Below the pieces are notes generated by a model. The model did not search any database. It was given only the letters and a program-made list of their open reading frames with translations, and was not told the DNA's origin. The translations under genes were made by a program, and so were the position numbers. A stretch of 64,000 bases of DNA from contig RQSC01000011.1 of assembly GCA_013416795.1 (NCBI GenBank), forward strand, positions 174,721-238,720, in the 5' to 3' direction. This stretch comes from Prasinococcaceae sp. CCMP 1430 (lineage: Eukaryota > Plantae > Prasinodermophyta). Shown here one piece after another: positions 2,889-57,006 of the stretch (positions are counted from its first letter, which is position 1; each line of letters starts with the position of its first letter).

Positions 2889-4125
2889 TTAGGCATTTGA
2901 GGGCAGCGTGTACACGACATCAGTCCTGCGTTGCCGCGCGCGCACCATAAATGGGGTCAGCGGCGCACAACCGCGCGCGACCGTCCACGCGCGCACGCGA
3001 GCGCACGCGCGTACGGACGCGTTGCATCCTCACCTCGCGACGAACTTGGTCCCCCGCGTGACTGCGCTGCCCTCGTGCACTGGTGCTCCACCGGCGCGGT
3101 ACCCGGAGTGGCCCTGCGGAAAGACTAGCACGCAACCTTTTCGCGGCGTGGCGCGCGTCGCTCGCATGGCGTGAGGCGCGGCGGCGGCGGCCGAGTAAAA
3201 GGTGGTGTGGCCGCCGTCGAAGTCCTCGCCGCCGCCGCTGTTCAAGTAGATCAGAAATGTCAGCCTGGAGCGAGCCTTGCCGCCGCTCGAGTCGAACTTG
3301 TACTCCCATTCGCGGCTGACGTTGCCAGCCCCGCTGGGCCCTGCGCCCGTGCCTGACCGTGCGCCGGCTGCGGCGCGCCCATCCGCGCGCCCGTTGCTCG
3401 CCTCGGCCCCGTTGCCACCACCTCGGCGTTCAACGCCACTCGGCGGCCAGTCGCCGTCCACGTGGGGGCGGTACACAGCCCCCTGCGTATAACGGTAGAT
3501 GCGCCACCGCCTGTTGAGCGAGTGCAGCTGCCCACCGTCCGGGGACACGCGCGGCAGCAGCGGTGCGACGCGTTCCCACAGGCGCTCCTGCACGGCGTCA
3601 TCTGCGCACCACACGCACGCGTCGATGCCTGCACCAGCTGCGGCCGCCGCGGGCGCTTGGCCCCGCGCGTCCGCGCTGGCACCCTCCGCGGCGTCGACCG
3701 CCCACCGTTGCCCCGCGGCGGCCTCGCCGCCGTCCCCTTCGACCGTAGGCAGCTCCGGTTCGTCAGGGGTAAAGCCCATCGCTTTCGCCGCCGCCAGGAG
3801 CGCGTCGCACTCCGCTGGGGCTAGCACGCCGCTCAGTAGCATCGCGCCGTCCACCTCGGGCCAGTCGTGGCGCGCCGCCACCACCGGCGTGGCGCGTTCG
3901 CCGCCCTCGGCGAGGGCCACCGGCGCGGCGCCGCGCTTGGGCGTGGCGTACACAACCAGGTCGTGCCGGTTACGCGGGCGGCGCTGCCAGCCGGGTTGCC
4001 GTAGCACTGGCACGTACCAGCCCCGCCCATCGGCGTCGTCGCTTGAGCCAACGCCAACGCCACGCTCTTCGCCGCCGCCGCCGCCGCATTCGCCTCCGTT
4101 GTCGCACGCCGTGCCGCTGCCACTG

Positions 4126-4156
<31 letters not shown>

Positions 4157-5486
4157 TCCCGTCCTGCCCAACTTCGCCACCCCCTCCGCCACCATGGTCC
4201 GCGCCCACGCCCGCGGCGGGATCGAAGGGTGGCAGCTCCTCACACCCGCGCGCCCCCGCCTCCAGCGCCTCGGGGGGCGCTGCGCCCGCGCGCGCGGCGA
4301 GCAGGCACGCCAGGCGGCGCAGCGAGCCCTCGCGGTCGCCCGGCGCGTCGCAGGCGCGCACGAGTAGCAGCCACGAGAGCTCGTCGGCGCCGCACGCGGG
4401 CTTGAAGTCCCCGCGAGCGCAGCGCGACGCGAGGGTGAGCGCCGCCGCCGCAGCGCCGGGAGAGCGCTCGCACTCGCGCACGCACGCGATGGCGGCGCAG
4501 CGCACGGCGACGGGGCCAGGCGCCATCGCAGTGGCGCCCGCTGCCGTCGCGGCCTCCATCTCCGTGAGCAGCCCCAGCGCGTCGGCGGAGCGCCCCCCGC
4601 GCGCGCACGCGGCGACGGCCGCCGTGTACGCGCGTGCATCTGCTGCGCCGGCCGCACGCGCGCGGCCGAGCGCTTCCAGCGCCTGGCCAGCCCGCCCCGC
4701 GCGCGCACAGGCGGAGATAGCCGCCGCCCACTCAGCGCCCGTCGGCGCCGCCGCTGCAGCGTCCTCACCCAGCCCCTCCGCAGCGTCTGCCAGCTCGCCC
4801 ACGGCATCCAGCGCCTCACGCCAGCGGCCGGCGTCGCGCAGCACAGCCAGTAGCGCTGCGTTTAGCACGCCACCCGCGCGCGCGCCGCCCGTGGTCGCGC
4901 CTGCGTTGACGCCGATACCCGCGGCTCGTGCACGCCTGCGCGCACGCGCGTGTGGAGGGGCGCACGCAGCAGGTGCGCGCGCGTGTGTGCGTCAGCCGGA
5001 GCCTGAAGGGAGGGGCCTGACGGCGCGTTCCGTCTCGCGCGGTCTATGCGCGCGTGCGCACCTCCATACTCGTAGCGCGTCGCGCCATCGCTCGTGCGCG
5101 CGCTGCCTGCACGCCTTGAGCGCGGCGGCGTACGCGCCCTCGGCGCCCGGCAGGTCGACGGCAGGGACGCCCACGCGCAGGTCCTCCTCCATCGCGCCGA
5201 GCGCCGCCCAGATTGCCGCCATCACGCCAGGTGCGGGGCCCGCGCCATGTGTGTTCCGTGCGGGGGAGGGCTCGCCGCTGGCGGCGCCGCAGGCGGCGTT
5301 GGCGTCGGTGTTGGCGGTGGGGGCGGCGATGGCCTCTTCGGCGTTATCGTCGGCGGCGTGCCTGCGTATGGCGGCGGCGTACGCGGCGCCACGTGCCGCG
5401 GGCAGGCGCCGCTCGGCGCGCGCACGCATGCGCGCGAGCAGCTCGTGGGGTTGCGCGGCCTGTCATCGCTCGCAGTCGAGCAGGCG
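2889..5486 (-). CDS. PPR-like repeat protein fused to a C-terminal 2OG-Fe(II) dioxygenase (P4H-like) domain; 5' end lost at N5487
   Basis: PPR-like units such as AYAAALKAC..WRDALRVWRRARAAGI, EWAAAISACARAGRAGQAL and AYTAAVAACARGGRSADALGLLTEM. Dioxygenase motifs YRPHVDG, LTFLIYLN, GGHTTF and HEGSAVTRGTKFVARTDVVY. Introns 4936-5061 and 2926-3033 restore the frame; stop TAA at 2889-2891. Confidence 0.8.
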
Positions 5487-5487
5487 N

Positions 5488-7563
5488 CCCGCGGCTGCGG
5501 CCGCCGCCGCTGCGAATGGCGGCGGAGGAGGCGGAGGAGGCAGCGGGGGAGGGGGGGAGGGGGGCGGCCTGCCGCTGCCGGTGGCGCTCGCAGCGGACGC
5601 GCTGGTGGCGGCGGTGCGCGCGACGGACAAGCTGGTGGTGGTGGGCGAGACGGGCAGCGGCAAGACGACGCTCCTGCCGCAGCTCATCCTCGACCGCGTT
5701 CTGGGCGGCGGCGCGCCGAGCGGCGGCGTGGTGGTCGCGCAGCCGCGGCGCGTGGCGGCGACGTCGGTGGCGAGGCGTGTCGCCGCCGAGCGCGGCGTGC
5801 CGCTCGGCGGCGAGGTGGGGTACGCCGTGCGGTTCGACGAGAAGGCGGACGCGCGCGTCACGCGGCTCAAGTACGTCACAGACGGATTGCTGGTGCGCGA
5901 GGCATTGCTCGACGGCACGCTCGCGCGCTACGCCGTCGCCGTGGTCGACGAAGCGCACGAGCGCTCAGTGCACACCGACGTGCTGCTCGGCGTGCTCGTG
6001 CGTGCGCAGCGTGCACGGCGAGCGGCGCACGACGCCGCGGCAGCGCGCGCCGCGGCGGGTGACGCGCGTGCTCTGGACGGCGTGCCGCCGCCGCTCAAGC
6101 TGCTCGTCATGAGCGCGACGCTCGACGCCGATGCCTTCCTCGACTTTCTGGGCGACGGCGCCGACGCGGTGTACGTCGCTGGCCGCTCGCACCCCGTGGA
6201 GGTGCTCTACACGCGCTCCCCGGAGCCGGACGTGCTCGAGGCCGCCCTGCTGGCGGTGGTGCAGGTGCACCTCGATGAGCGCCCCGGCGGCGTGCTTGTC
6301 TTCCTCACAGGTCAGGAGGAGATCGAGAGCGCGGAGTCACTGCTGAAGGAGCGCGCGCGCCTCCTTCCCGCCGCCGCGGGGCCGCTGCAGGTGCTGCCGC
6401 TCTTCGCCGCGCAGACGGCCGACCTTCAGGAGCGCGTCTTCGCGCCCGTGCCGGAGGGCCACCGGCGCGTCATCCTCGCCACCACCATCGCCGAGACCTC
6501 TCTCACGCTGCCGGGAGTTCGCTACGTTGTCGACACGGGACTCTGTAAGGCGCGCGCCTTCAACGCGCGCACTGGCGTCGATGCGCTCGTCGTAACGCCC
6601 GTCTCAAAGGCGGCCGCGCGGCAGCGCGCGGGGCGCGCGGGGCGCGAGGCGCCGGGCAAGTGCTTTCGCCTGTACACGGAGCGCGCCTTCGACCAGCTGA
6701 AGGCCACCGCCCCCCCCGAGATCCTGCGCTGCCACCTCGCGTCTATCGTGCTGCAGCTCAAGGCGATGGGCATCAAGGACGTGGCGGGTTTCGAGTTCAT
6801 GGCCGCGCCGCCGCGCAGCGCGCTGCTGCGCGCACTGGAGCAGCTGTACGCGCTGGGCGCGCTCGACGACAACGGAGAGCTCACGCGGCCGCTGGGCGAG
6901 CAGATGGCCGCGCTGCCGCTCGAGCCCATGGCTGCCAAGATGGTGTTGCGCTCGGGCGCGCACGGCTGCGCGCGCGAGGCGCTCGCGCTGGCGGGCATGA
7001 TGAGCGTCGACGCTATCTTCGTGAGCCCGCGCGCCAAGCACGAGCAGGCGGCCGCCGCAAGGCGGAAGCTCGGGGCCTCGCAGGGGGACCACCTCACGCT
7101 GCTCAACGTCTTCAGGGCCTTCCGCGAGGTGTCGGACAAGGGCGAGGCCGCGTGGTGCCGCGAGCGCTTCGTGTCGCGCCGCGCGCTGCTCAAGGCCTTC
7201 AGCGTGGCCAACCAGCTCGTGCGGTACGGCGAGGGCGCGGGGATCGACACCGAGTCGTCGTGCGGAAACAACCTCGAGCCGCTGCGCCGGTGCCTCGCGG
7301 AGGGCTTCTTCCTCCACGCGGCGCGGGCCATGCCCGACGGCTCGTACAAGTGCCTCGCGAGTGGCCAAGTGGTAAGCGTGCACCCCAGCAGCGTGCTGGG
7401 CGGCGCGCAGCGCGCGCGCCACCCGTGCGTGGTCTATTCGGAGCTCGTTCGCACCACGAAGGTGTGGATGCGCGACGTGACCGCGATCGAGCCGCGCTGG
7501 CTGGCGGAGCTCGCACCGAGGTTCTACGCGAGCGCGCCCGCCGCGGGCGTGCACGAGGACTGA
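5488..7563 (+). CDS. DEAH-box RNA helicase (DHX33/RID1-like); start probably lost at N5487
   Basis: GETGSGKTT, QPRRVAA, DEAHER, MSAT, TTIAETSLT and QRAGRAGRE motifs, then HA2 and OB-fold-like C-terminus; a single long exon. Confidence 0.92.
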   Translation, partial: PAAAAAAAANGGGGGGGGSGGGGEGGGLPLPVALAADALVAAVRATDKLVVVGETGSGKTTLLPQLILDRVLGGGAPSGGVVVAQPRRVAATSVARRVAAERGVPLGGEVGYAVRFDEKADARVTRLKYVTDGLLVREALLDGTLARYAVAVVDEAHERSVHTDVLLGVLVRAQRARRAAHDAAAARAAAGDARALDGVPPPLKLLVMSATLDADAFLDFLGDGADAVYVAGRSHPVEVLYTRSPEPDVLEAALLAVVQVHLDERPGGVLVFLTGQEEIESAESLLKERARLLPAAAGPLQVLPLFAAQTADLQERVFAPVPEGHRRVILATTIAETSLTLPGVRYVVDTGLCKARAFNARTGVDALVVTPVSKAAARQRAGRAGREAPGKCFRLYTERAFDQLKATAPPEILRCHLASIVLQLKAMGIKDVAGFEFMAAPPRSALLRALEQLYALGALDDNGELTRPLGEQMAALPLEPMAAKMVLRSGAHGCAREALALAGMMSVDAIFVSPRAKHEQAAAARRKLGASQGDHLTLLNVFRAFREVSDKGEAAWCRERFVSRRALLKAFSVANQLVRYGEGAGIDTESSCGNNLEPLRRCLAEGFFLHAARAMPDGSYKCLASGQVVSVHPSSVLGGAQRARHPCVVYSELVRTTKVWMRDVTAIEPRWLAELAPRFYASAPAAGVHED

Positions 7564-7693
7564 CAAGAAAGTCGCCAGCAATGTAATGAGTAATATGTAT
7601 GCGTGACACGGCCGGCCACTTCCGTCTCCACTGCTGGCAGCACGCGTTTGCTCTCACACAAACTTGCTTGAACGCCTATGATCCTTGGCTTGC

Positions 7694-9440
7694 TCAGGGG
7701 CATCCGTTCTCGCTGAGGTCGATAGCAGGACACTCGAAGCTATTCTGCAGGGTCAGCGCCGTGCCAAGGTCGTCATTGCACTTCCACCCGCCTTTCTCGA
7801 GCATCACGCTGGGGTCCATGGGGTCGGCGTCCGTGCACTCGGTCGCATCAACGAGCTGCACTGACTGGTCAAAGACCCGCTTCATGTCCCACAGGATGCG
7901 AGTGGCGCGCTCGTACGAGAACGAGGTGTCGATGGGCCATGAGACCATCTGGCCAGTCTCCATGGCGGGGTGGTTGAACGTCCAGCCGCGCTCCTCGTCC
8001 GAGAGCACAATGTGGTCGTTGTGGAAGCGGCCGTCGTAGAGGAACACGTCCGCCCCCGGGAAGCCCTCCGGAATCTCGCCGCTCGTCGAGTTGTACTGGA
8101 CCCACTCCCAGTAGCTCCCACGATCGTCGTTGACCTCGACATGCACCATTGGCACGCCCAGCTGCTCGAGCATGATCAGAATGGGGTCGTGCGTAGGCTG
8201 CGCCAGGTACATCGTGTCGGGCGCCATGCTGACCGCGAGCGCACGGACGCCATTTGATGCCATGAATTTGGCACTCGCGGCAAGCTCAGCAATGGCGGTC
8301 TTGAGCTGCTGGCAGTACACGGCGATGTCATGGTTGGTGTGACCATCGCCGCCGATGGCGGTGGCAAGACGCTGGAAGTTGGCGATGACCTCCAGGTAGC
8401 TGATGCCGCCCACGCGCATAGGGATGATCGGCAGTGGGTCAACGCCAGTGGAATCGGTCATGTTCGCGAGGCCCGCATTCTCGCCGAAAGACAAGAGCCC
8501 AGTGTGAGGCGCGTCATGTGCGCACTCACTCTCGTTCAGCGTGCAGTACGCGTAGTCGACGATCATGTCGGGCTGGACGTTTGGAGCACAGTCGGCGTGC
8601 AGTGCGAGACGACAAAATGAAAAGACCGCACAGCCACCATACAGTATTTAGTCAGGGTCAGAACACTCGTAGGCGCCCATTGCCACACTGGCAGCTATTT
8701 TCTGCTCACACACCGCAGCATGCCGCGCTCTGATTGTGATGCGCACCCAGCCTCAGGCTGTACCAACAGCTACGCGCTTTCACGCCGCAGTCAGCCTGAA
8801 GTTTATGGCGCGCCCCTCACCTGCAGCGCGGCGACCTTCTCGAGGTCCAGAGTGTTGCCCGTGCTGGCGTTGGTATCGAGCACTGACTCCATGCGCTCGA
8901 AGTGCGCGGACATGCACACTCCTGCGTGGCAGAGCTGATCCTGGCCCAGAGCGTCGCCGGAGTGGCTACACGGGCCGGGAAGGTGAGGGCCAGTGAGTGA
9001 AGAGCCAAGCAAGCAGCAACACAATACTAGTCAGCGGAAATGGGCGCGATTGTTGCAGCGTGCGGCGCCCGCGCGCGGCGGTGACGTGTGATCACTGCGG
9101 ATCCCTCAAGACACGCACCCGAAGTAGCCGACGAGGTGGTCGTGCAGGCCCATGTTCCAGAGCGTGTCGCACACATCGACGTGGCAGATGACGCGCGGAC
9201 TCTCCGCGGCGCCGCTTTGAGGACGGATGGATTGGCACACGTGCGCAGAGCGACTGTCAGCATTGAAGATGCAGACATACACGATCGTGGCAGGCAAGAT
9301 AGCACTCCCGTGCAACAATCAGCAAGCGCATCCAACCTGTACGTGTGGCCCATCCCATTGTCGTAGGACCAGCCGTTGGCGAGCGTCGGCGCCAGCGCGA
9401 ACACTGCTAGCGAGGCTGCGAAGGCTGCGAGACGCGCCAT
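7694..9440 (-). CDS. Secreted Fe-siderophore periplasmic-binding-protein homologue (DesE/FhuD class, diatom FBP1-like)
   Basis: Four exons (9440-9337, 9214-9119, 8965-8821, 8572-7694) with canonical GT-AG sites and consistent phases. Signal peptide MARLAAFAASLAVFALAPTLA. Spliced motif LDLEKVAALQPDMIV, plus WSYDNGMG, LWNMGL..LVGYFG, LEQLGV..YWE, ADVFLYDGR and HPAMETGQMVSWP...FSY. Confidence 0.72.
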
Positions 9441-9998
9441 GGCTACGGCCGTCGGTCCTGGCAGGAAGCGCTAGCTAGACTGCCAAAAACTGCGCGATCG
9501 CGCGCGGGCAAGCGCGGGCGAGTGCCAGTGAGCAGGCAGGGGCTCAGCACTCCGTCCGCGCAGGTACGCTAGCTCCCGCTCCCTCCCGCTCCCCTGGCCG
9601 CGCACGCGCTCTGGCGGCCGCGCCTGCGGCAGCCGGCGGCGGCCGTCCCATGGCCGGCGTCGCCCGCGCCGTGCGGGCACCCTGCACCGCGCGTGTGGCC
9701 GGCACGCGCGTCGCCGGCGCGCAAAAATCCGCTTCAAAGCTGGCGCCGGGCAGCGCCAGTGGCACCGCAGCCGCGCCCCTTCGCCACAGCGCCCCCCTCA
9801 CCGCCCTCCTCAAAACGCACGCGCGGCGGGCGGGCGAGGCGCCCGAGGTCTCGGCGGGCGGGCGGGCTGGCGTGCCCCTTCACAAAGCTCGCAGCATCCG
9901 ATGCTCTCGACAAGTGAGCGATGCGATCGCACGCTCGCCGGGTACCTACTGAGCACTCTCGGGACTGGGAGTTCGCCGTCGGCGGTGGCGGCGCGTGG

Positions 9999-10725: not shown

Positions 10726-13467
10726 CTACGCCAGGTAGTTGTACACCGACGAGTTGTCCTTGTCGCGCTCAAGGTACTCGCGATTGATCAGGTCCTCGAT
10801 CCTCTTCTTGATCATCCTGAGGTCGGGCTTGAACATCTTCTGCAGCTGCTGCATGCACTCCATCACCAGCTGCTGGTGCTGCATTGACTTGCGGGTCTTC
10901 ATGATGCGCACGATCGCCGCGTCGATCGCGTAGCGCCTGTCCTTGTCGACGTCCTCCATCACCTTCTTCTTCTCGTCCATGGGGGGCAGCGGGATCTTGA
11001 TCCGGCGCATCTTGTCGGTGAAGCTCTCGTTGAAACTGAAGACGTCCTCGGATGGCTTGATGGTGCGCCCCTCGGGCTCCTTCTTGAGCACCTTGTACTT
11101 GGCGCAAGAGAGCGAGTGCAGCAGCCGCGTGACGTCCTCCTGCTTGAGGTTGAGCTGCTCCTTGATCTCCTCGTACGACAGCTTCTCGTTGGTGTTGAAC
11201 AGCATGAGCAGCGCCCCCTGGTACGTGCTCATCGACATCTCGATGGTCTTCGCCTTGAAGAAGCCCTTCATCTGCACGGTCCCCAGGCTGTACACCCACG
11301 TGAGCTTGCGGTGCTTGGTGTGGGAATCGTGGTACTCCTGGTAGAGGTTCACGCACTGCTCCAGCTCCTTGGGAATGCGCACGTCTTGGGTGGGGTACGT
11401 CGGCCAGTAGCCGGTGGTGAGCACCGTCACCGTCACGTCCACGAGCTTCTCGCTGCCCTCCTTTCCTGCCAGGAAGTCCTGGAACTTCGCGTGGCCCTCG
11501 CGCGCGATCGTCAGGTCGGTCACCATGCCTTCCATCTTCGACGTGAACTGCGCGCCGCACTGCTGCTTGAGCTTCGCCAGCACCGAGCGCTCGTGGTCGT
11601 CGTTGGCGCTCTTGTCGAAGAGCAGGCGCCGCGCCAGCTTCTTCCGCGCGAATTCGCCGAAGAGGTCCTTGTCGCTGACGTACGCAAGCAGTCGCACGAC
11701 CTTGTCGAGCTGCTCTTCGACCGCGTCGTCGCTGAGGCGCTCGCCACCGCCCTTGCTGAGCAGATTGTTGCAGAAAGTCGCGAGCAGCTCCGCCGAGCTG
11801 CTGCCAGCCACCCCCTTGTTGAGGAACATCTCGAACGCATCCTTGAGCGCCTTGTTGAACAGGTGACTCTTCTGGAAGCAGCCCGTCACGTACTCCATGT
11901 ACTTGTCGTGCAGCTCGATGGCGCGCCTGACGAACGCCTGCTCCTGCCCCGCCGTGCTGGCTGCCTTGGCCCGCTTGCCCCCCTCGGCCTCCGCCCCCGC
12001 TTTGCGCTCCTTGGCGGCCTCCTCCGCGGTGCGCACAATGCCCATGCCCTCCGCCTGCACATGCGCGCGGAAGGCGGCGCTGATCGGCGCGAGGCCCTCG
12101 GGGATGCGCGAGAACAGGCGGAACATGCGACTGAGGTCGTCGACCTTGTCGTCCCGCATGAGCGCCGCGCAGCCGCTGCTCTCCTTCTCCAGCAGCTGCG
12201 TCTGGTGTACCTTGAGCAACTCGTGCTCCGCCTTGGCCAGCAGCTTCTCCTCGCTCGAGGTGTGCAGGTAGTGGGCAACGCGCTCGCGCTCGCGTTTGAG
12301 GTGCTCCTCGGCCTTCACCATGTACTCTGGACACGAGTCGTCGGTGATCCACGCCGCGCTCTTGCGAGAGTAGTACGCGGCAGTGTCCTCGAGCAAGAAT
12401 GCTTCGAAGTCCGTCTCGTAACCCTCGAGTCCACCCATGCCAATCTCCACGAAGATGTCCACAACGCTTTTGAGCAACGAGCGGTCCACCGACTCGCCCT
12501 CGCGCTCCTTGTTCACTAGCACTAGCACGGCGTCCTTGACAGGCTTCTTGAGCTCAGCGAACACCAGATCGCGGAACGCAACCAGCCCCACCACGTTCAG
12601 CTTGTTCAGCGAGTGCCGCGTGACGTAGTACCGGTCCAGGTAGTTGAAGAAGCGCGAGAGCCACCGCACCATCACCTTGTGGTTTTCCCAGCGCTTCACC
12701 AGCGCGCGCAGCATCTGCTCGTCGCGCTCCTCGCGCAGCGCGGGCAGCACCTTGGCGGTGATGTAGTCATTGAACGATTGCCGGTAGCGCTCGTACAGCT
12801 GCGGGCTGTAGTCGTGCGGCGGCTTCTGCGTGCACATGTTGTAGATCGTACTGCGCGCGCCGAGGGAAGGCGTCAGCGGGCGGCCGGTGGCCAGGGCGGC
12901 GGGGGCAAAGCGCGCGCAGCGTCAGCACGGCGGTAGGGCGCGCAACGCGCAGGCCGAGCCACCACGCGCGACGCGCGAGGCCCGCGCCAAATCAGACGCC
13001 GCGGCCTCGCCTCGGGCCCGCGACGGCGACCGCCGAGGGGCCAACACCCACCAGACGAGGGCGCGCGCGAGCGCGCACGAATGAGAGCCGAGGCGCCCAG
13101 CGGGCCGGCGCGCTTCGGATCCCGCGGGCCCAAGCCCACGTCGATCGGCGCCGCTGGGACGCGCTTCGCGCGCGGCGCGCTCACGCCCGCTCTGGCCGCG
13201 GCCGACCTGCAGGCCGTACGGTGCGAGCAGCGGGCGTGGCGCTCGTGGCGGCGCGGATCCGGGATGCGCAGAGGAGCAGATCGTCGCCGCCGCGCAATTG
13301 CGCCCGCGCCGCGCGCCGCGCCGCACGCACGTGTACAGGTGCATGTAGAGGTCGACGCCGAAGGGCTCCTCGTTCTCGCCCTCGAGGATGTTGATCAGCT
13401 TGGCGACGCCCTTCCTCATGTCCTCCCAGCCCGCCTCCAGCTCGATGATGGGCTGCCCCACCACCAT
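10726..13467 (-). CDS. CUL1: Cullin-1
   Basis: Exon 1 13467-13331, intron 13330-12851, exon 2 12850-10726. Plant-type N-terminus [18 protein letters not shown], cullin homology domain, and neddylation region [12 protein letters not shown]...[13 protein letters not shown]. Confidence 0.97.
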
Positions 13468-22031: not shown

Positions 22032-22686
22032 CGTCGCAATGGTCGCGATGGCCCCGTGCTTGACACGATCGAGGGGGGCCGAGCGATGCCCCGCGGAGGG
22101 ACGGACGCGCCCAGCGCGAGCGCTCAGGCGCGGACGCGGCGCGAACCGTACGAACTGCGGCGCCTCTGCGCGCCGCGCGCGTCGCCGCGGCATTCAACGN
22201 NNNNNNNNNNNNNNNNNNNNNNNNNNNNNNNNNNNNNNNNNNNNNNNNNNNNNNNNNNNNNNNNNNNNNNNNNNNNNNNNNNNNNNNNNNNNNNNNNNNG
22301 CAGCGCCGCCGCGGACGCTGCGGCTGCTGCGCTCGCGCGGCGGCGCGCGCGAGGGTCGCCATGCTCGCCGAGCCGCTCTGTCGGAGGCCGGTCCGCCGGT
22401 CCGCTCGGTCAGGGGGGGTGTGAGGAAGGGGAGATGGTGGCGGCGCGGCGCGGGGCTGCGGTGTGGGGCGCGCAGTGTGCCCCCCAGCCCGCCCCCCATC
22501 CCCCCCCTGGCGCCCGCGAGCGGATAGAGCGATCACGCCGAGATCTTCGCGCCGTCGCAGCGCGAGCGACACACGCGCCCACATGCCGGTTGTTGGGTGA
22601 GCACAGTTCATAACCGCAAAAGTTTGCCAATTTCGGTACTTTTGAATGCGTTTTGACCTGCCAACTGCTCCACGCGTTTTGACGGC

Positions 22687-22786: not shown

Positions 22787-23864
22787 GGCTTCTGCTCGTC
22801 CAATCAATCGCCTGCGTTCCCCCACGAACGATTCATTCGGTATGCGCCCGTTTTCGAAATTTCGTGCGGCCCCACCCCCCCGACGCGCGCACGCCCCACA
22901 CGCGGGGCGGCGCCCACGCACACACTCGCNNNNNNNNNNNNNNNNNNNNNNNNNNNNNNNNNNNNNNNNNNNNNNNNNNNNNNNNNNNNNNNNNNNNNNN
23001 NNNNNNNNNNNNNNNNNNNNNNNNNNNNNNNNNNNNNNNNNNNNNNNNNNNNNNNNNNNNNNNNNNNNNNNNNNNNNNNNNNNNNNNNNNNNNNNNNNNN
23101 NNNNNNNNNNNNNNNNNNNNNNNNNNNNNNNNNNNNNNNNNNNNNNNNNNNNNNNNNNNNNNNNNNNNNNNNNNNNNNNNNNNNNNNNNNNNNNNNNNNN
23201 NNNNNNNNNNNNNNNNNNNNNNNNNNNNNNNNNNNNNNNNNNNNNNNNNNNNNNNNNNNNNNNNNNNNNNNNNNNNNNNNNNNNNNNNNNNNNNNNNNNN
23301 NNNNNNNNNNNNNNNNNNNNNNNNNNNNNNNNNNNNNNNNNNNNNNNNNNNNNNNNNNNNNNNNNNNNNNNNNNNNNNNNNNNNNNNNNNNNNNNNNNNN
23401 NNNNNNNNNNNNNNNNNNNNNNNNNNNNNNNNNNNNNNNNNNNNNNNNNNNNNNNNNNNNNNNNNNNNNNNNNNNNNNNNNNNNNNNNNNNNNNNNNNNN
23501 NNNNNNNNNNNNNNNNNNNNNNNNNNNNNNNNNNNNNNNNNNNNNNNNNNNNNNNNNNNNNNNNNNNNNNNNNNNNNNNNNNNNNNNNNNNNNNNNNNNN
23601 NNNNNNNNNNNNNNNNNNNNNNNNNNNNNNNNNNNNNNNNNNNNNNNNNNNNNNNNNNNNNNNNNNNNNNNNNNNNNNNNNNNNNNNNNNNNNNNNNNNN
23701 NNNNNNNNNNNNNNNNNNNNNNNNNNNNNNNNNNNNNNNNNNNNNNNNNNNNNNNNNNNNNNNNNNNNNNNNNNNNNNNNNNNNNNNNNNNNNNNNNNNN
23801 NNNNNNNNNNNNNNNNNNNNNNNNNNNNNNNNNNNNNNNNNNNNNNNNNNNNNNNNNNNNNNNN

Positions 23865-27498: not shown

Positions 27499-28519
27499 CG
27501 CAAGCGCGCGCGCGGGCGGGAAGGATGGTGGTGGTCTGTGTATTCCTCCGTGTATTATAGCATCCACAGCGAGCGGCCGCGCGCGCCTCCGCGCCGCCGG
27601 CGCGACCGCGCGCCAGCGCTCAGCGCCTCCCGAGCGCANNNNNNNNNNNNNNNNNNNNNNNNNNNNNNNNNNNNNNNNNNNNNNNNNNNNNNNNNNNNNN
27701 NNNNNNNNNNNNNNNNNNNNNNNNNNNNNNNNNNNNNNNNNNNNNNNNNNNNNNNNNNNNNNNNNNNNNNNNNNNNNNNNNNNNNNNNNNNNNNNNNNNN
27801 NNNNNNNNNNNNNNNNNNNNNNNNNNNNNNNNNNNNNNNNNNNNNNNNNNNNNNNNNNNNNNNNNNNNNNNNNNNNNNNNNNNNNNNNNNNNNNNNNNNN
27901 NNNNNNNNNNNNNNNNNNNNNNNNNNNNNNNNNNNNNNNNNNNNNNNNNNNNNNNNNNNNNNNNNNNNNNNNNNNNNNNNNNNNNNNNNNNNNNNNNNNN
28001 NNNNNNNNNNNNNNNNNNNNNNNNNNNNNNNNNNNNNNNNNNNNNNNNNNNNNNNNNNNNNNNNNNNNNNNNNNNNNNNNNNNNNNNNNNNNNNNNNNNN
28101 NNNNNNNNNNNNNNNNNNNNNNNNNNNNNNNNNNNNNNNNNNNNNNNNNNNNNNNNNNNNNNNNNNNNNNNNNNNNNNNNNNNNNNNNNNNNNNNNNNNN
28201 NNNNNNNCGCTCGCCGAGTGGCGGGCGCGGCGGCGCGCGGCAGCCGCCAGCGCCAGCCGCCGCGCCAAAATGCGCTCCCCCATTTCGCGCGCGCGCTCTT
28301 CCGCAGGAACGTATCGAAACGAACCCGCGCGCCCTCAGAAATTCAGAATCATCACCACGACCGCGAGTACGAACGGCCTCCCCACGGGAGAGCGATACCG
28401 CCGCATGTTGGGGTCGGGGGTTGTTGTTGGGGTACCGTGTGTATGCGTAGGGTTGTGAATCGCCATCAAACCGCATCCACACAGCGCGGCATTATCCGCG
28501 CACGGCCCGCTACGCGCGT

Positions 28520-43870: not shown

Positions 43871-44298
43871 CGCGCGCGCGCTCCCATGTGCCGCGCGTTC
43901 GACCTCCGATTCGAATCTCAATCCGACGTGCGCGCGCGGGCGGCCGCGCCGTGCCCCGCCGCCCGCCCGCGTGNNNNNNNNNNNNNNNNNNNNNNNNNNN
44001 NNNNNNNNNNNNNNNNNNNNNNNNNNNNNNNNNNNNNNNNNNGGGCGCGGCGGATCGGGCCGGGCCGCGCCGTGCGAGGCGCGGGCGCGCGGCCCTGGCC
44101 GGCGCTCTCGGTCTCGGTCTCGTCCTGGTTGACGCACAATGGACTGACTGTCGAAGGTCGACCTGAGGTTGCTACAGTACAAGCAGCACTAGTACTTCTA
44201 TCATACTATCCGTCCATCGCACCATGGTGGTCGACGAGCGCTAGAGCTAGCTAGAGAGAGTCATGGACTAGCTAGAGAGAGCGGCTGGGCTGCAGGGG

Positions 44299-56114: not shown

Positions 56115-57006
56115 GCCCGCGCGCCCGCCCGCCCCGGATCTGCGGGCCGGCAGCCGGCCACGCACATGCGCCGCAGCGCGCACGCGCTGTGGCCCACCGC
56201 ATCCCGCCTGCGCCCCCCCCTCCCGCCCCCTTCCAATCCCCGCGCCCCGCCCCTGCCGCACCGCCGCCCCTCCCTCCGCCCGCGGGGAGGCCGCCGTGCT
56301 TGCTGCGTGCGCCCCACATCGGGATCGAGGCGCGCCACCGCATTCATGGTTTTTCGAATTCGCGTGGTATCGTCGCCGGCGGCGCCAGCCTCGCTCGCGC
56401 GCGCGCGCGGCGCGCGCGCGCGCGCGCGGGGGAACCAGAACCGGAACCATTTCTTCTCCGCGCTTCTGTCTCGGCGATGCGGGTGCGGATTGAAAGACGC
56501 GGAAGCCGGGCATTTCGACGCGCGGGTGCGTGTCGCCCTTCGAGTTTTCGCGCGCGCGCGCGCGCGCNNNNNNNNNNNNNNNNNNNNNNNNNNNNNNNNN
56601 NNNNNNNNNNNNNNNNNNNNNNNNNNNNNNNNNNNNNNNNNNNNNNNNNNNNNNNNNNNNNNNNNNNNNNNNNNNNNNNNNNNNNNNNNNNNNNNNNNNN
56701 NNNNNNNNNNNNNNNNNNNNNNNNNNNNNNNNNNNNNNNNNNNNNNNNNNNNNNNNNNNNNNNNNNNNNNNNNNNNNNNNNNNNNNNNNNNNNNNNNNNN
56801 NNNNNNNNNNNNNNNNNNNNNNNNNNNNNNNNNNNNNNNNNNNNNNNNNNNNNNNNNNNNNNNNNNNNNNNNNNNNNNNNNNNNNNNNNNNNNNNNNNNN
56901 NNNNNNNNNNNNNNNNNNNNNNNNNNNNNNNNNNNNNNNNNNNNNNNNNNNNNNNNNNNNNNNNNNNNNNNNNNNNNNNNNNNNNNNNNNNNNNNNNNNN
57001 NNNNNN

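What the first reader, a model, noticed from the sequence alone, without database searches (positions are those of the whole stretch)
7694..9440. Intron-containing, secreted actinobacterial-type siderophore-binding protein in a green alga
Seen in sequence: only after splicing four exons does the class III periplasmic-binding motif LDLEKVAALQPDMIV appear, along with further blocks resembling Streptomyces DesE-type ferrioxamine receptors. It has a signal peptide and a Cys-rich tail with no TM. Established: the diatom Phaeodactylum uses a bacteria-derived FBP1, with a ferric reductase, to take up hydroxamate-siderophore iron. Inference: a domesticated bacterial gene enabling siderophore piracy in a green lineage. 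A cobalamin-binding (BtuF/CBA1-like) role is the alternative. No ferric reductase is visible in this window.
Basis: partly seen in the sequence, partly recalled or inferred. Interest (0 to 1): 0.72.

Follow-up and report, generated by a model that had tools for sequence, protein, structure and literature searches.

The report
Algal DesE-like siderophore-binding protein gene
The marine green alga Prasinoderma coloniale has a real, spliced and expressed gene for a secreted protein shaped like the bacterial ferrioxamine receptor DesE, but a 2019 diatom paper already listed this exact protein as an FBP1 relative, so little here is new.

Summary
A four-exon gene on the minus strand (9440..7694, three GT..AG introns) encodes a 407-residue secreted protein. 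RNA-derived contigs show all three splice joints. Only the spliced product gives even a weak Pfam PF01497 match.

The predicted structure matches DesE, the Streptomyces ferrioxamine receptor, far better than any other solved chain (Z 29.0; next best 17.1; BtuF 14.8-15.5). The nearest bacterial sequences are actinomycete substrate-binding proteins.

The finding is not new. The same peptide (MMETSP0806, P. coloniale CCMP1413) is in Dataset S1, "FBP1_homologs", of Coale et al. 2019 (PNAS). UniProt names it "Fe/B12 periplasmic-binding domain-containing protein".

What I add:
- It belongs to a separate eukaryotic clade, shared with Bathycoccus, Mantoniella and haptophytes, not the clade I assign to tested diatom FBP1 by N-terminal motif.
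- Unlike most of that clade it has no linker or membrane anchor.
- Its closest relative lies tail-to-tail with a ferric reductase gene; this window has none.
- The genome annotation adds 13 residues that the RNA contigs do not support.

Siderophore binding and iron uptake remain untested. A vitamin B12 role is unlikely.

The parts
9441..9533 (-). 5' untranslated region (minimum extent)
   Evidence: The X2 transcript contig (record 4) runs up to 9533.
9337..9440 (-). Exon 1: start codon, signal peptide (about residues 1-23, nt 9440..9372) and the start of the mature protein (WSYDNG...)
   Evidence: and the joint at 9337. The hydrophobic maximum is at the N-terminus. Relatives and DesE share the W-S/T-F/Y start of the mature chain.
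9215..9336 (-). Intron 1 (122 nt, GT..AG)
   Evidence: Joint 9214|9337 in the X2 contig; intron ends. The genome annotation PRCOL_00006107 (P0020) uses an acceptor 39 nt upstream instead.
9119..9214 (-). Exon 2: first strand and helix of the N-lobe (RVICHVDVCDTLWNMGL...VGYFG)
   Evidence: The C-H-x-D-x-C motif marks clade I.
8966..9118 (-). Intron 2 (153 nt, GT..AG)
   Evidence: Joint 8965|9119 in X1, X2 and the marine metatranscriptome X3.
8821..8965 (-). Exon 3: N-lobe insert with the CHAGVC pair, ending in LDLEKVAALQ
8573..8820 (-). Intron 3 (248 nt, GT..AG); it is absent from the closest relative's gene (L005)
   Evidence: Joint 8572|8821 in X1 and X2. The L005 reading frame runs uninterrupted across this point.
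7694..8572 (-). Exon 4 (292 codons plus stop): rest of the N-lobe, the long backbone helix (residues 198-221), the C-lobe with the YWE and LYDGR motifs, and the Cys-rich tail
   Evidence: ORF; DesE alignment; model secondary structure; conserved columns.
7697..7837 (-). Cys-rich C-terminal tail (residues 361-407; C361, C380, C396, C406). It ends where most relatives continue into a linker and a membrane helix.
7592..7693 (-). 3' untranslated region (minimum extent). It ends about 30 nt from the stop codon of the convergent helicase gene (7563).
   Evidence: X1 contig record 1 covers 7592..8210; helicase ORF.

Best explanation
This is the nuclear gene of Prasinoderma coloniale for a secreted member of the algal FBP1 family. 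It is a two-lobed class III substrate-binding protein of the DesE (ferrioxamine receptor) type, with a eukaryote-specific Cys-rich C-terminal extension. Shown here: the gene model, its expression, the fold and the family placement. Inferred: it binds ferric hydroxamate siderophores made by bacteria outside the cell and hands the complex to an uptake route in which a ferric reductase releases the iron, as FBP1 and FRE2 do in Phaeodactylum. It has no membrane anchor, so it must either be held in the cell wall or colony matrix or dock on a partner that has not been identified.
For: Splicing and expression. Product identical to P0019 (UniRef A0A7R9Y895, Tax=Prasinoderma coloniale). AF2 model with pLDDT 87.8 and pTM 0.89. 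DesE is the only PDB sequence match and the top structural match, with Z 29.0 and rmsd 2.5 A over 291 of 298 residues; the next best is 17.1. The best-scoring bacterial relatives I looked up by name are Kutzneria, Allokutzneria, Nonomuraea and Microlunatus binding proteins. The protein is listed among the FBP1 homologues of Coale et al. 2019, where FBP1 and FRE2 knockouts lost ferrioxamine use and Salinispora DesE rescued the FBP1 knockout. The closest relative (P0002, 55% identical) lies tail-to-tail with an FRE-type ferric reductase gene (PF01794, E 8.5e-12).
Against: No binding, uptake or iron-regulation data exist for this protein or for any member of its clade (clade I). The tested FBP1 most likely belongs to the sister clade II; I assigned it there by its N-terminal motif, because its sequence was not in my tree. 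The match to Pfam PF01497 is below threshold (20.1 against 27.5 bits). There is no membrane anchor and no ferric reductase in the window. The reductase linkage was seen in one lineage only, not in the other clade-I loci. A review reports no cell-surface ferric reductase activity in the green picoalgae Micromonas and Ostreococcus.
Confidence: 0.62

Rival explanations
1. It binds a different iron chelate or metal complex, such as a catecholate or carboxylate siderophore, ferric citrate, haem, or an iron complex of the alga's own picolinic acid. On this reading it is a DesE-fold protein whose ligand has changed.
For: Identity to DesE is only 18-20%. Clade I is separated by long branches from both the bacteria and the FBP1 clade. 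Class III proteins with the same fold bind many ligands. The genome paper proposes picolinic acid as a metal-complexing metabolite of this alga.
Against: DesE stands 12 Z units above every other binding protein. A DesE from Salinispora can replace diatom FBP1. I could not examine pocket residues.
Confidence: 0.18
2. It is a soluble siderophore trap rather than an uptake receptor. Having lost its anchor, it would sequester ferric siderophores around the cell or colony and withhold iron from bacteria, as siderocalin does in animals.
For: It has no membrane helix and no linker, while most clade-I relatives have both. There is no adjacent reductase. The anchorless ending is present in 13 of the 15 listed members of its 90% identity cluster.
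Against: No precedent in algae is known to me. A freely diffusing protein is costly for a picoplankter. The relatives are built like receptors.
Confidence: 0.1
3. It is a cobalamin-binding protein, like BtuF or CBA1, serving this B12-dependent alga.
For: P. coloniale needs vitamin B12. CBA1 is reported to have a BtuF-like fold. UniProt's automatic name is the generic 'Fe/B12 periplasmic-binding domain'.
Against: BtuF scores Z 14.8-15.5 against 29.0 for DesE. No BtuF chain is among Foldseek's top 50. The CBA1 search of Sayer et al. 2023 picked a different P. coloniale protein. The protein was recovered by an FBP1 profile.
Confidence: 0.05

Closest known systems
DesE, the ferrioxamine lipoprotein receptor of Streptomyces coelicolor (PDB 2x4l, 6enk)
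   Same: It has the same two-lobe class III fold along its whole length (Z 29.0, rmsd 2.5 A, 291 of 298 residues). The mature N-terminus shares a W-S-F/Y start. The C-lobe shares the aromatic-W/F-E and D-x-R motifs.
   Different: Identity is about 20%. The alga uses a eukaryotic signal peptide instead of a lipobox. It has extra Cys pairs, an insert in the N-lobe and a 47-residue Cys-rich tail. The gene has introns and no ABC permease partner nearby.
FBP1 of Phaeodactylum tricornutum (Phatr3_J46929; Coale et al. 2019)
   Same: Both belong to the same published homologue set, have a DesE-like fold and share a Cys-containing C-terminal extension. Bacterial ancestry is proposed for both.
   Different: This protein falls in clade I, and proteins with FBP1's FTDDLGVTH-type N-terminus fall in clade II. 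Coale et al. describe a C-terminal membrane anchor on FBP1 and a divergently placed FRE2 about 1.5 kb away. This protein has neither.
Clade-I FBP1-like proteins of Bathycoccus (MMETSP1460), Mantoniella antarctica (MMETSP1106), Coccolithus braarudii (MMETSP0164) and unnamed marine metagenome proteins (P0002-P0014)
   Same: They share the C-H-x-D-x-C and C-H-x-x-x-C motifs and are 36-55% identical to this protein.
   Different: Most carry a linker (proline-rich in several) and one C-terminal membrane helix. Some are fused to DUF305 or lectin-like domains. The P. coloniale protein stops right after the Cys-rich tail.
CBA1 / BtuF (cobalamin acquisition)
   Same: The general class III binding-protein architecture.
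   Different: The structural match is much weaker, and a separate P. coloniale protein fills the CBA1 slot.

Membership tests
Class III (cluster A) substrate-binding proteins / Pfam PF01497 Peripla_BP_2 | Two alpha/beta lobes joined by one long rigid helix | tested here: met
   The AF2 model (pLDDT 87.8) has a helix at residues 198-221 between the lobes. Among the 1000 top-ranked PDB chains, 221 score Z 8 or more, and those listed are siderophore, haem and B12 binding proteins.
Class III (cluster A) substrate-binding proteins / Pfam PF01497 Peripla_BP_2 | Score above Pfam's gathering threshold (27.5 bits) | tested here: not met
   20.1 bits, E 4.5e-4, residues 51-125 only. None of the 14 aligned sequences scanned (11 relatives and three window exon translations) matches PF01497 at E 1 or better.
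DesE-type hydroxamate siderophore receptors | DesE is the closest characterised relative by sequence and by structure | tested here: met
   DesE is the only PDB sequence match (E 4.9e-5 single sequence; 6.7e-8 family profile). Z is 29.0 against 17.1 for the next chain.
DesE-type hydroxamate siderophore receptors | Lipoprotein signal (lipobox Cys) and a cognate ABC permease/ATPase | tested here: not met
   The protein has a eukaryotic signal peptide and no lipobox. The neighbours are a DEAH-type helicase, a small unknown gene and a cullin.
DesE-type hydroxamate siderophore receptors | Binds ferrioxamine or another ferric hydroxamate | not testable with these tools
   This needs purified protein. 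I also found no open paper listing DesE's pocket residues.
Algal FBP1 family (Coale et al. 2019) | Recovered by the authors' FBP1 profile and included in their tree | tested here: met
   The Dataset S1 row MMETSP0806_2-20130528_26295_1 matches the window's product over the part of the row that is shown. MMETSP0806 is P. coloniale CCMP1413.
Algal FBP1 family (Coale et al. 2019) | Same clade as the functionally tested P. tricornutum FBP1 | tested here: not met
   It falls in clade I (support 100/99). Proteins with the FBP1-type N-terminus form clade II (100/97). The P. tricornutum sequence itself was not in my tree.
Algal FBP1 family (Coale et al. 2019) | C-terminal membrane anchor | tested here: not met
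   No hydrophobic segment follows the signal peptide, and the stop codon lies 131 nt from the convergent gene's stop.
Algal FBP1 family (Coale et al. 2019) | Neighbouring FRE-type ferric reductase gene | tested here: not met
   tblastn of P0276, P0277 and the L005 reductase against the window gives nothing below E 0.2. The feature is met in the closest relative's locus, L005/L006.
Algal FBP1 family (Coale et al. 2019) | Induced by iron limitation | not tested
   No iron-limitation data set for P. coloniale was at hand. The available contigs show only that the gene is transcribed.
CBA1 / BtuF cobalamin-binding proteins | Best match to BtuF or to the CBA1 profile | tested here: not met
   BtuF scores Z 14.8-15.5. 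The CBA1 homologue table of Sayer et al. lists a different P. coloniale sequence.

The most novel reading that the evidence does not exclude
In the Prasinoderma lineage the receptor lost its linker, its membrane helix and its linkage to a ferric reductase gene. It became a soluble protein, or one held in the wall or matrix, that captures ferric siderophores (or the alga's own picolinate-type iron complexes) around the colony. That would be a mode of action distinct from membrane-anchored FBP1. Its eleventh, lineage-specific Cys next to the C-terminus could tether it by a disulfide bond.
Probability: 0.2. Interest if true: 0.5.

Novelty: already known. Interest (0 to 1): 0.3.

Why it matters
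Iron limits growth over much of the ocean, and using other organisms' siderophores is one route around that limit. [quoted passage not shown] That was already documented, without comment, in a 2019 data set. The useful additions are practical. There is now a corrected gene model. The green-algal and haptophyte proteins are recognised as a clade of their own that nobody has tested. One member lacks an anchor, and one relative is linked to a ferric reductase. Together these make good material for testing whether clade I really handles siderophores.

Tried and rejected
- Pfam and NCBIfam scans of the four exon translations gave nothing.
- My first gene model used the exon 2 acceptor at 9253 and gave 420 aa, the same as the genome annotation P0020. 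The RNA contigs reject it; they join 9337 to 9214.
The database protein P0019 served instead, and I checked it against the window exon by exon.
- The word-index search with exon 4 alone found only five proteins, and the search with the family alignment found no diatom FBP1. The exhaustive profile search was needed to reach clade II and the bacteria.
- The cluster look-ups gave names for the P. coloniale cluster and for bacterial clusters only; the other eukaryotic clusters I looked up (clade I; P0110, P0107 and clade II) carry no taxon name.
- I looked for a ferric reductase beside the other clade-I genes (L001-L004, L011-L015) and found none.
- I could not establish whether the reductase P0277 (Tara scaffolds, GC 0.66-0.68) belongs to P. 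coloniale. The scan's own notes were blank.
- I searched for a paper giving DesE's ferrioxamine-contacting residues, so as to test pocket conservation, and found none in the library.
- Contamination was considered and rejected. The gene has introns, matches the GC content of its surroundings, lies between eukaryotic genes, and one 142.8-kb DNA contig (X5, record 12) covers the whole laid stretch 7500-9600.

Full report
**Gene model and expression**

Reading the reverse strand gives four exons:
- exon 1: 9440..9337
- exon 2: 9214..9119
- exon 3: 8965..8821
- exon 4: 8572..7694, including the stop

The three introns are 122, 153 and 248 nt, and all are GT..AG. My first guess for the exon 2 acceptor was 9253, which is also what the genome annotation uses. 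It was wrong.

Contigs of two runs of the same organism, recorded as probable RNA, carry the joints 8572|8821 and 8965|9119. One of them (X2) also carries 9214|9337. One contig runs from 9533 in the 5' UTR across all three introns, and another reaches 7592 in the 3' UTR. A marine metatranscriptome run carries the 8965|9119 joint as well. A DNA run covers the whole stretch in a single 142.8-kb contig.

A cluster look-up returned P0019 instead. It is 407 aa, comes from a complete MMETSP transcript ORF, and is UniRef100_A0A7R9Y895, "Fe/B12 periplasmic-binding domain-containing protein", Tax=Prasinoderma coloniale. The same look-up returned P0020 (420 aa), the EukProt gene model PRCOL_00006107-RA. 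Every exon translation is an exact substring of P0019, and both split codons agree. P0020 differs by 13 extra residues that come from the unsupported upstream acceptor.

**Protein features**

The first 23 or so residues are hydrophobic, and the mature chain starts WSY. Relatives start WSF, WTY or WEF, and DesE and an Aeromicrobium binding protein have the same W-S-F at that point.

After the signal peptide, no 19-residue window exceeds a Kyte-Doolittle mean of 1.16. Anchored relatives reach 1.9-3.2 near their C-termini.

The protein has 11 Cys, four of them in the last 47 residues. The stop codon lies 131 nt from the stop of the convergent helicase gene, so there is no room for a further exon.

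The motif LDLEKVAALQ|PDMIV spans the exon 3/4 joint. Single exons give no family match. The spliced product gives PF01497 at E 4.5e-4 and 20.1 bits, below the 27.5-bit cut-off.

**What the protein is**

Against all PDB sequences the only real match is DesE (2x4l/6enk). The E-value is 4.9e-5 with the single sequence and 6.7e-8 with a family profile.

An AlphaFold2 model built on 64 aligned sequences has pLDDT 87.8 and pTM 0.89. It shows two alpha/beta lobes joined by a long helix at residues 198-221.

Foldseek ranks DesE first (E 8e-16, target TM-score 0.80). Siderophore binding proteins such as FecB, the fuscachelin protein, PiuA, FepB, YfiY, CeuE and Vibrio FhuD follow, and no BtuF chain is in the top 50.

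The second-look aligner gives these scores:

| Chain | Z |
|---|---|
| DesE | 29.0 (rmsd 2.5 A, 291 of 298 residues) |
| HtsA (next best) | 17.1 |
| BtuF | 14.8-15.5 |

The fold is therefore class III, and specifically DesE-like.

**Family and phylogeny**

The family is small. An exhaustive profile search of 1.84 billion representatives found 348 proteins at E 1e-3 or better, 157 at 1e-10 and 38 at 1e-30.

The hits fall into three groups:
- **Clade I** carries C-H-x-D-x-C and C-H-x-x-x-C motifs and includes this protein.
- **Clade II** has N-termini like diatom FBP1 (FTDDLGVTH...).
- **Bacterial proteins** of about 340 aa; the ones whose clusters I looked up are named Kutzneria, Allokutzneria, Nonomuraea, Microlunatus and a Thermomicrobiales MAG.

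A careful IQ-TREE tree of 53 rows makes each group one side of a branch: bacteria 100/100, clade II 100/97, clade I 100/99. P0019 is sister to P0002 at 100/100. The earlier 69-row quick tree agrees.

I left out fragments, near-duplicates and four long or ambiguous rows (P0115, P0117, P0216, P0225). The tree is unrooted. It shows that the two eukaryotic clades do not attach to different sampled bacterial subgroups. That fits one transfer followed by duplication, as Coale et al. proposed, but it does not prove it.

**Already published**

Dataset S1 ("FBP1_homologs") of Coale et al. 2019 has a row, MMETSP0806_2-20130528_26295_1, whose peptide is this protein. MMETSP0806 is P. coloniale CCMP1413. 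The legend of their Fig. 6 names chlorophytes, although the text mentions only diatoms, haptophytes and dinoflagellates.

Other rows with clade-I motifs come from Bathycoccus RCC716 (MMETSP1460), Mantoniella antarctica (MMETSP1106) and Coccolithus braarudii (MMETSP0164).

That paper showed three things:
- P. tricornutum FBP1 and FRE2 knockouts cannot use ferrioxamine B.
- Salinispora DesE rescues the FBP1 knockout.
- FBP1 and FRE2 are divergent neighbours.

The P. coloniale genome paper does not mention the gene.

**What differs here**

In the alignment of 11 clade-I relatives, eight continue after the Cys-rich tail into a linker (proline-rich in several) and a hydrophobic C-terminal segment. 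The P. coloniale protein stops at ...ENGCP, and so do the 12 listed 290-residue members of its 90% identity cluster, going by their length and by P0001's sequence.

The closest relative, P0002 (55% identical), comes from contigs with GC 0.61-0.64 from an unidentified organism. It keeps the anchor and lacks intron 3. Its gene lies tail-to-tail, about 470 nt away, with an FRE-type ferric reductase gene. That reductase matches PF01794 at E 8.5e-12, and its full-length form is P0276 at 635 aa.

The window contains no reductase and no paralogue of the binding protein. Its neighbours are a DEAH-type helicase, a small unknown gene and a cullin. The other clade-I loci I fetched show no reductase either.

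**The B12 alternative**

P. coloniale needs vitamin B12, and CBA1 is reported to resemble BtuF. However, the CBA1 homologue table of Sayer et al. 2023 lists a different P. coloniale sequence, and BtuF is a far poorer structural match than DesE.

**Verdict**

The function is inferred from homology and from one linked reductase gene in a relative. The find itself is already in the literature and in UniProt.

The modest additions are the corrected gene model, the separate untested clade, the missing anchor and the missing reductase linkage.

Noticed in passing
window 9215-9253 (minus strand): The public gene model PRCOL_00006107-RA (P0020, 420 aa) uses an exon 2 acceptor 39 nt upstream of the one seen in the RNA contigs. 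This adds 13 residues (RSAHVCQSIRPQS) that are absent from the MMETSP transcript protein P0019.
   Followed up: yes
L005:1033-5036 and L006: In the closest relative's locus, an anchored FBP-like gene lies tail-to-tail with an FRE-type ferric reductase gene. In L005 the reductase is split over two reading frames around position 3861-3867. It is a single 635-aa ORF (P0276) on another contig.
   Followed up: partly
L001:4022-4786 (minus), L002:1036-1800, L003:773-1537: A second, very divergent FBP-like paralogue (27-30% identical, E about 2e-8) lies about 5 kb upstream of the P0003 gene on the opposite strand, in an unidentified organism with GC about 0.62.
   Followed up: no
proteins P0110, P0273, P0107, P0111: Some clade-I relatives carry the binding domain at the C-terminal end of much longer proteins. 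The N-terminal extension matches DUF305 in P0273 (E 7e-10) and P0110 (E 2.4e-5, below Pfam's cut-off), or a concanavalin-like lectin domain (P0107).
   Followed up: partly
protein P0007 (526 aa): The reading frame starts with the C-terminal part of one FBP-like copy and continues into a second complete copy. This suggests tandem genes or a tandem-domain protein.
   Followed up: no
window 7563-7694: The helicase gene (3499..7563, plus strand) and this gene converge, with stop codons 131 nt apart. The transcript contig of this gene reaches 7592, so the two 3' ends nearly abut.
   Followed up: no
window 10726-12837 (minus): A long uninterrupted ORF (703 aa) encodes what looks like a cullin by its sequence. 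It is unrelated to the finding.
   Followed up: no
window 22200-22299, 22930-23864, 27639-28207, 43974-44042, 56568-57006: Runs of N (assembly gaps) account for the low-GC bins in the composition profile.
   Followed up: yes
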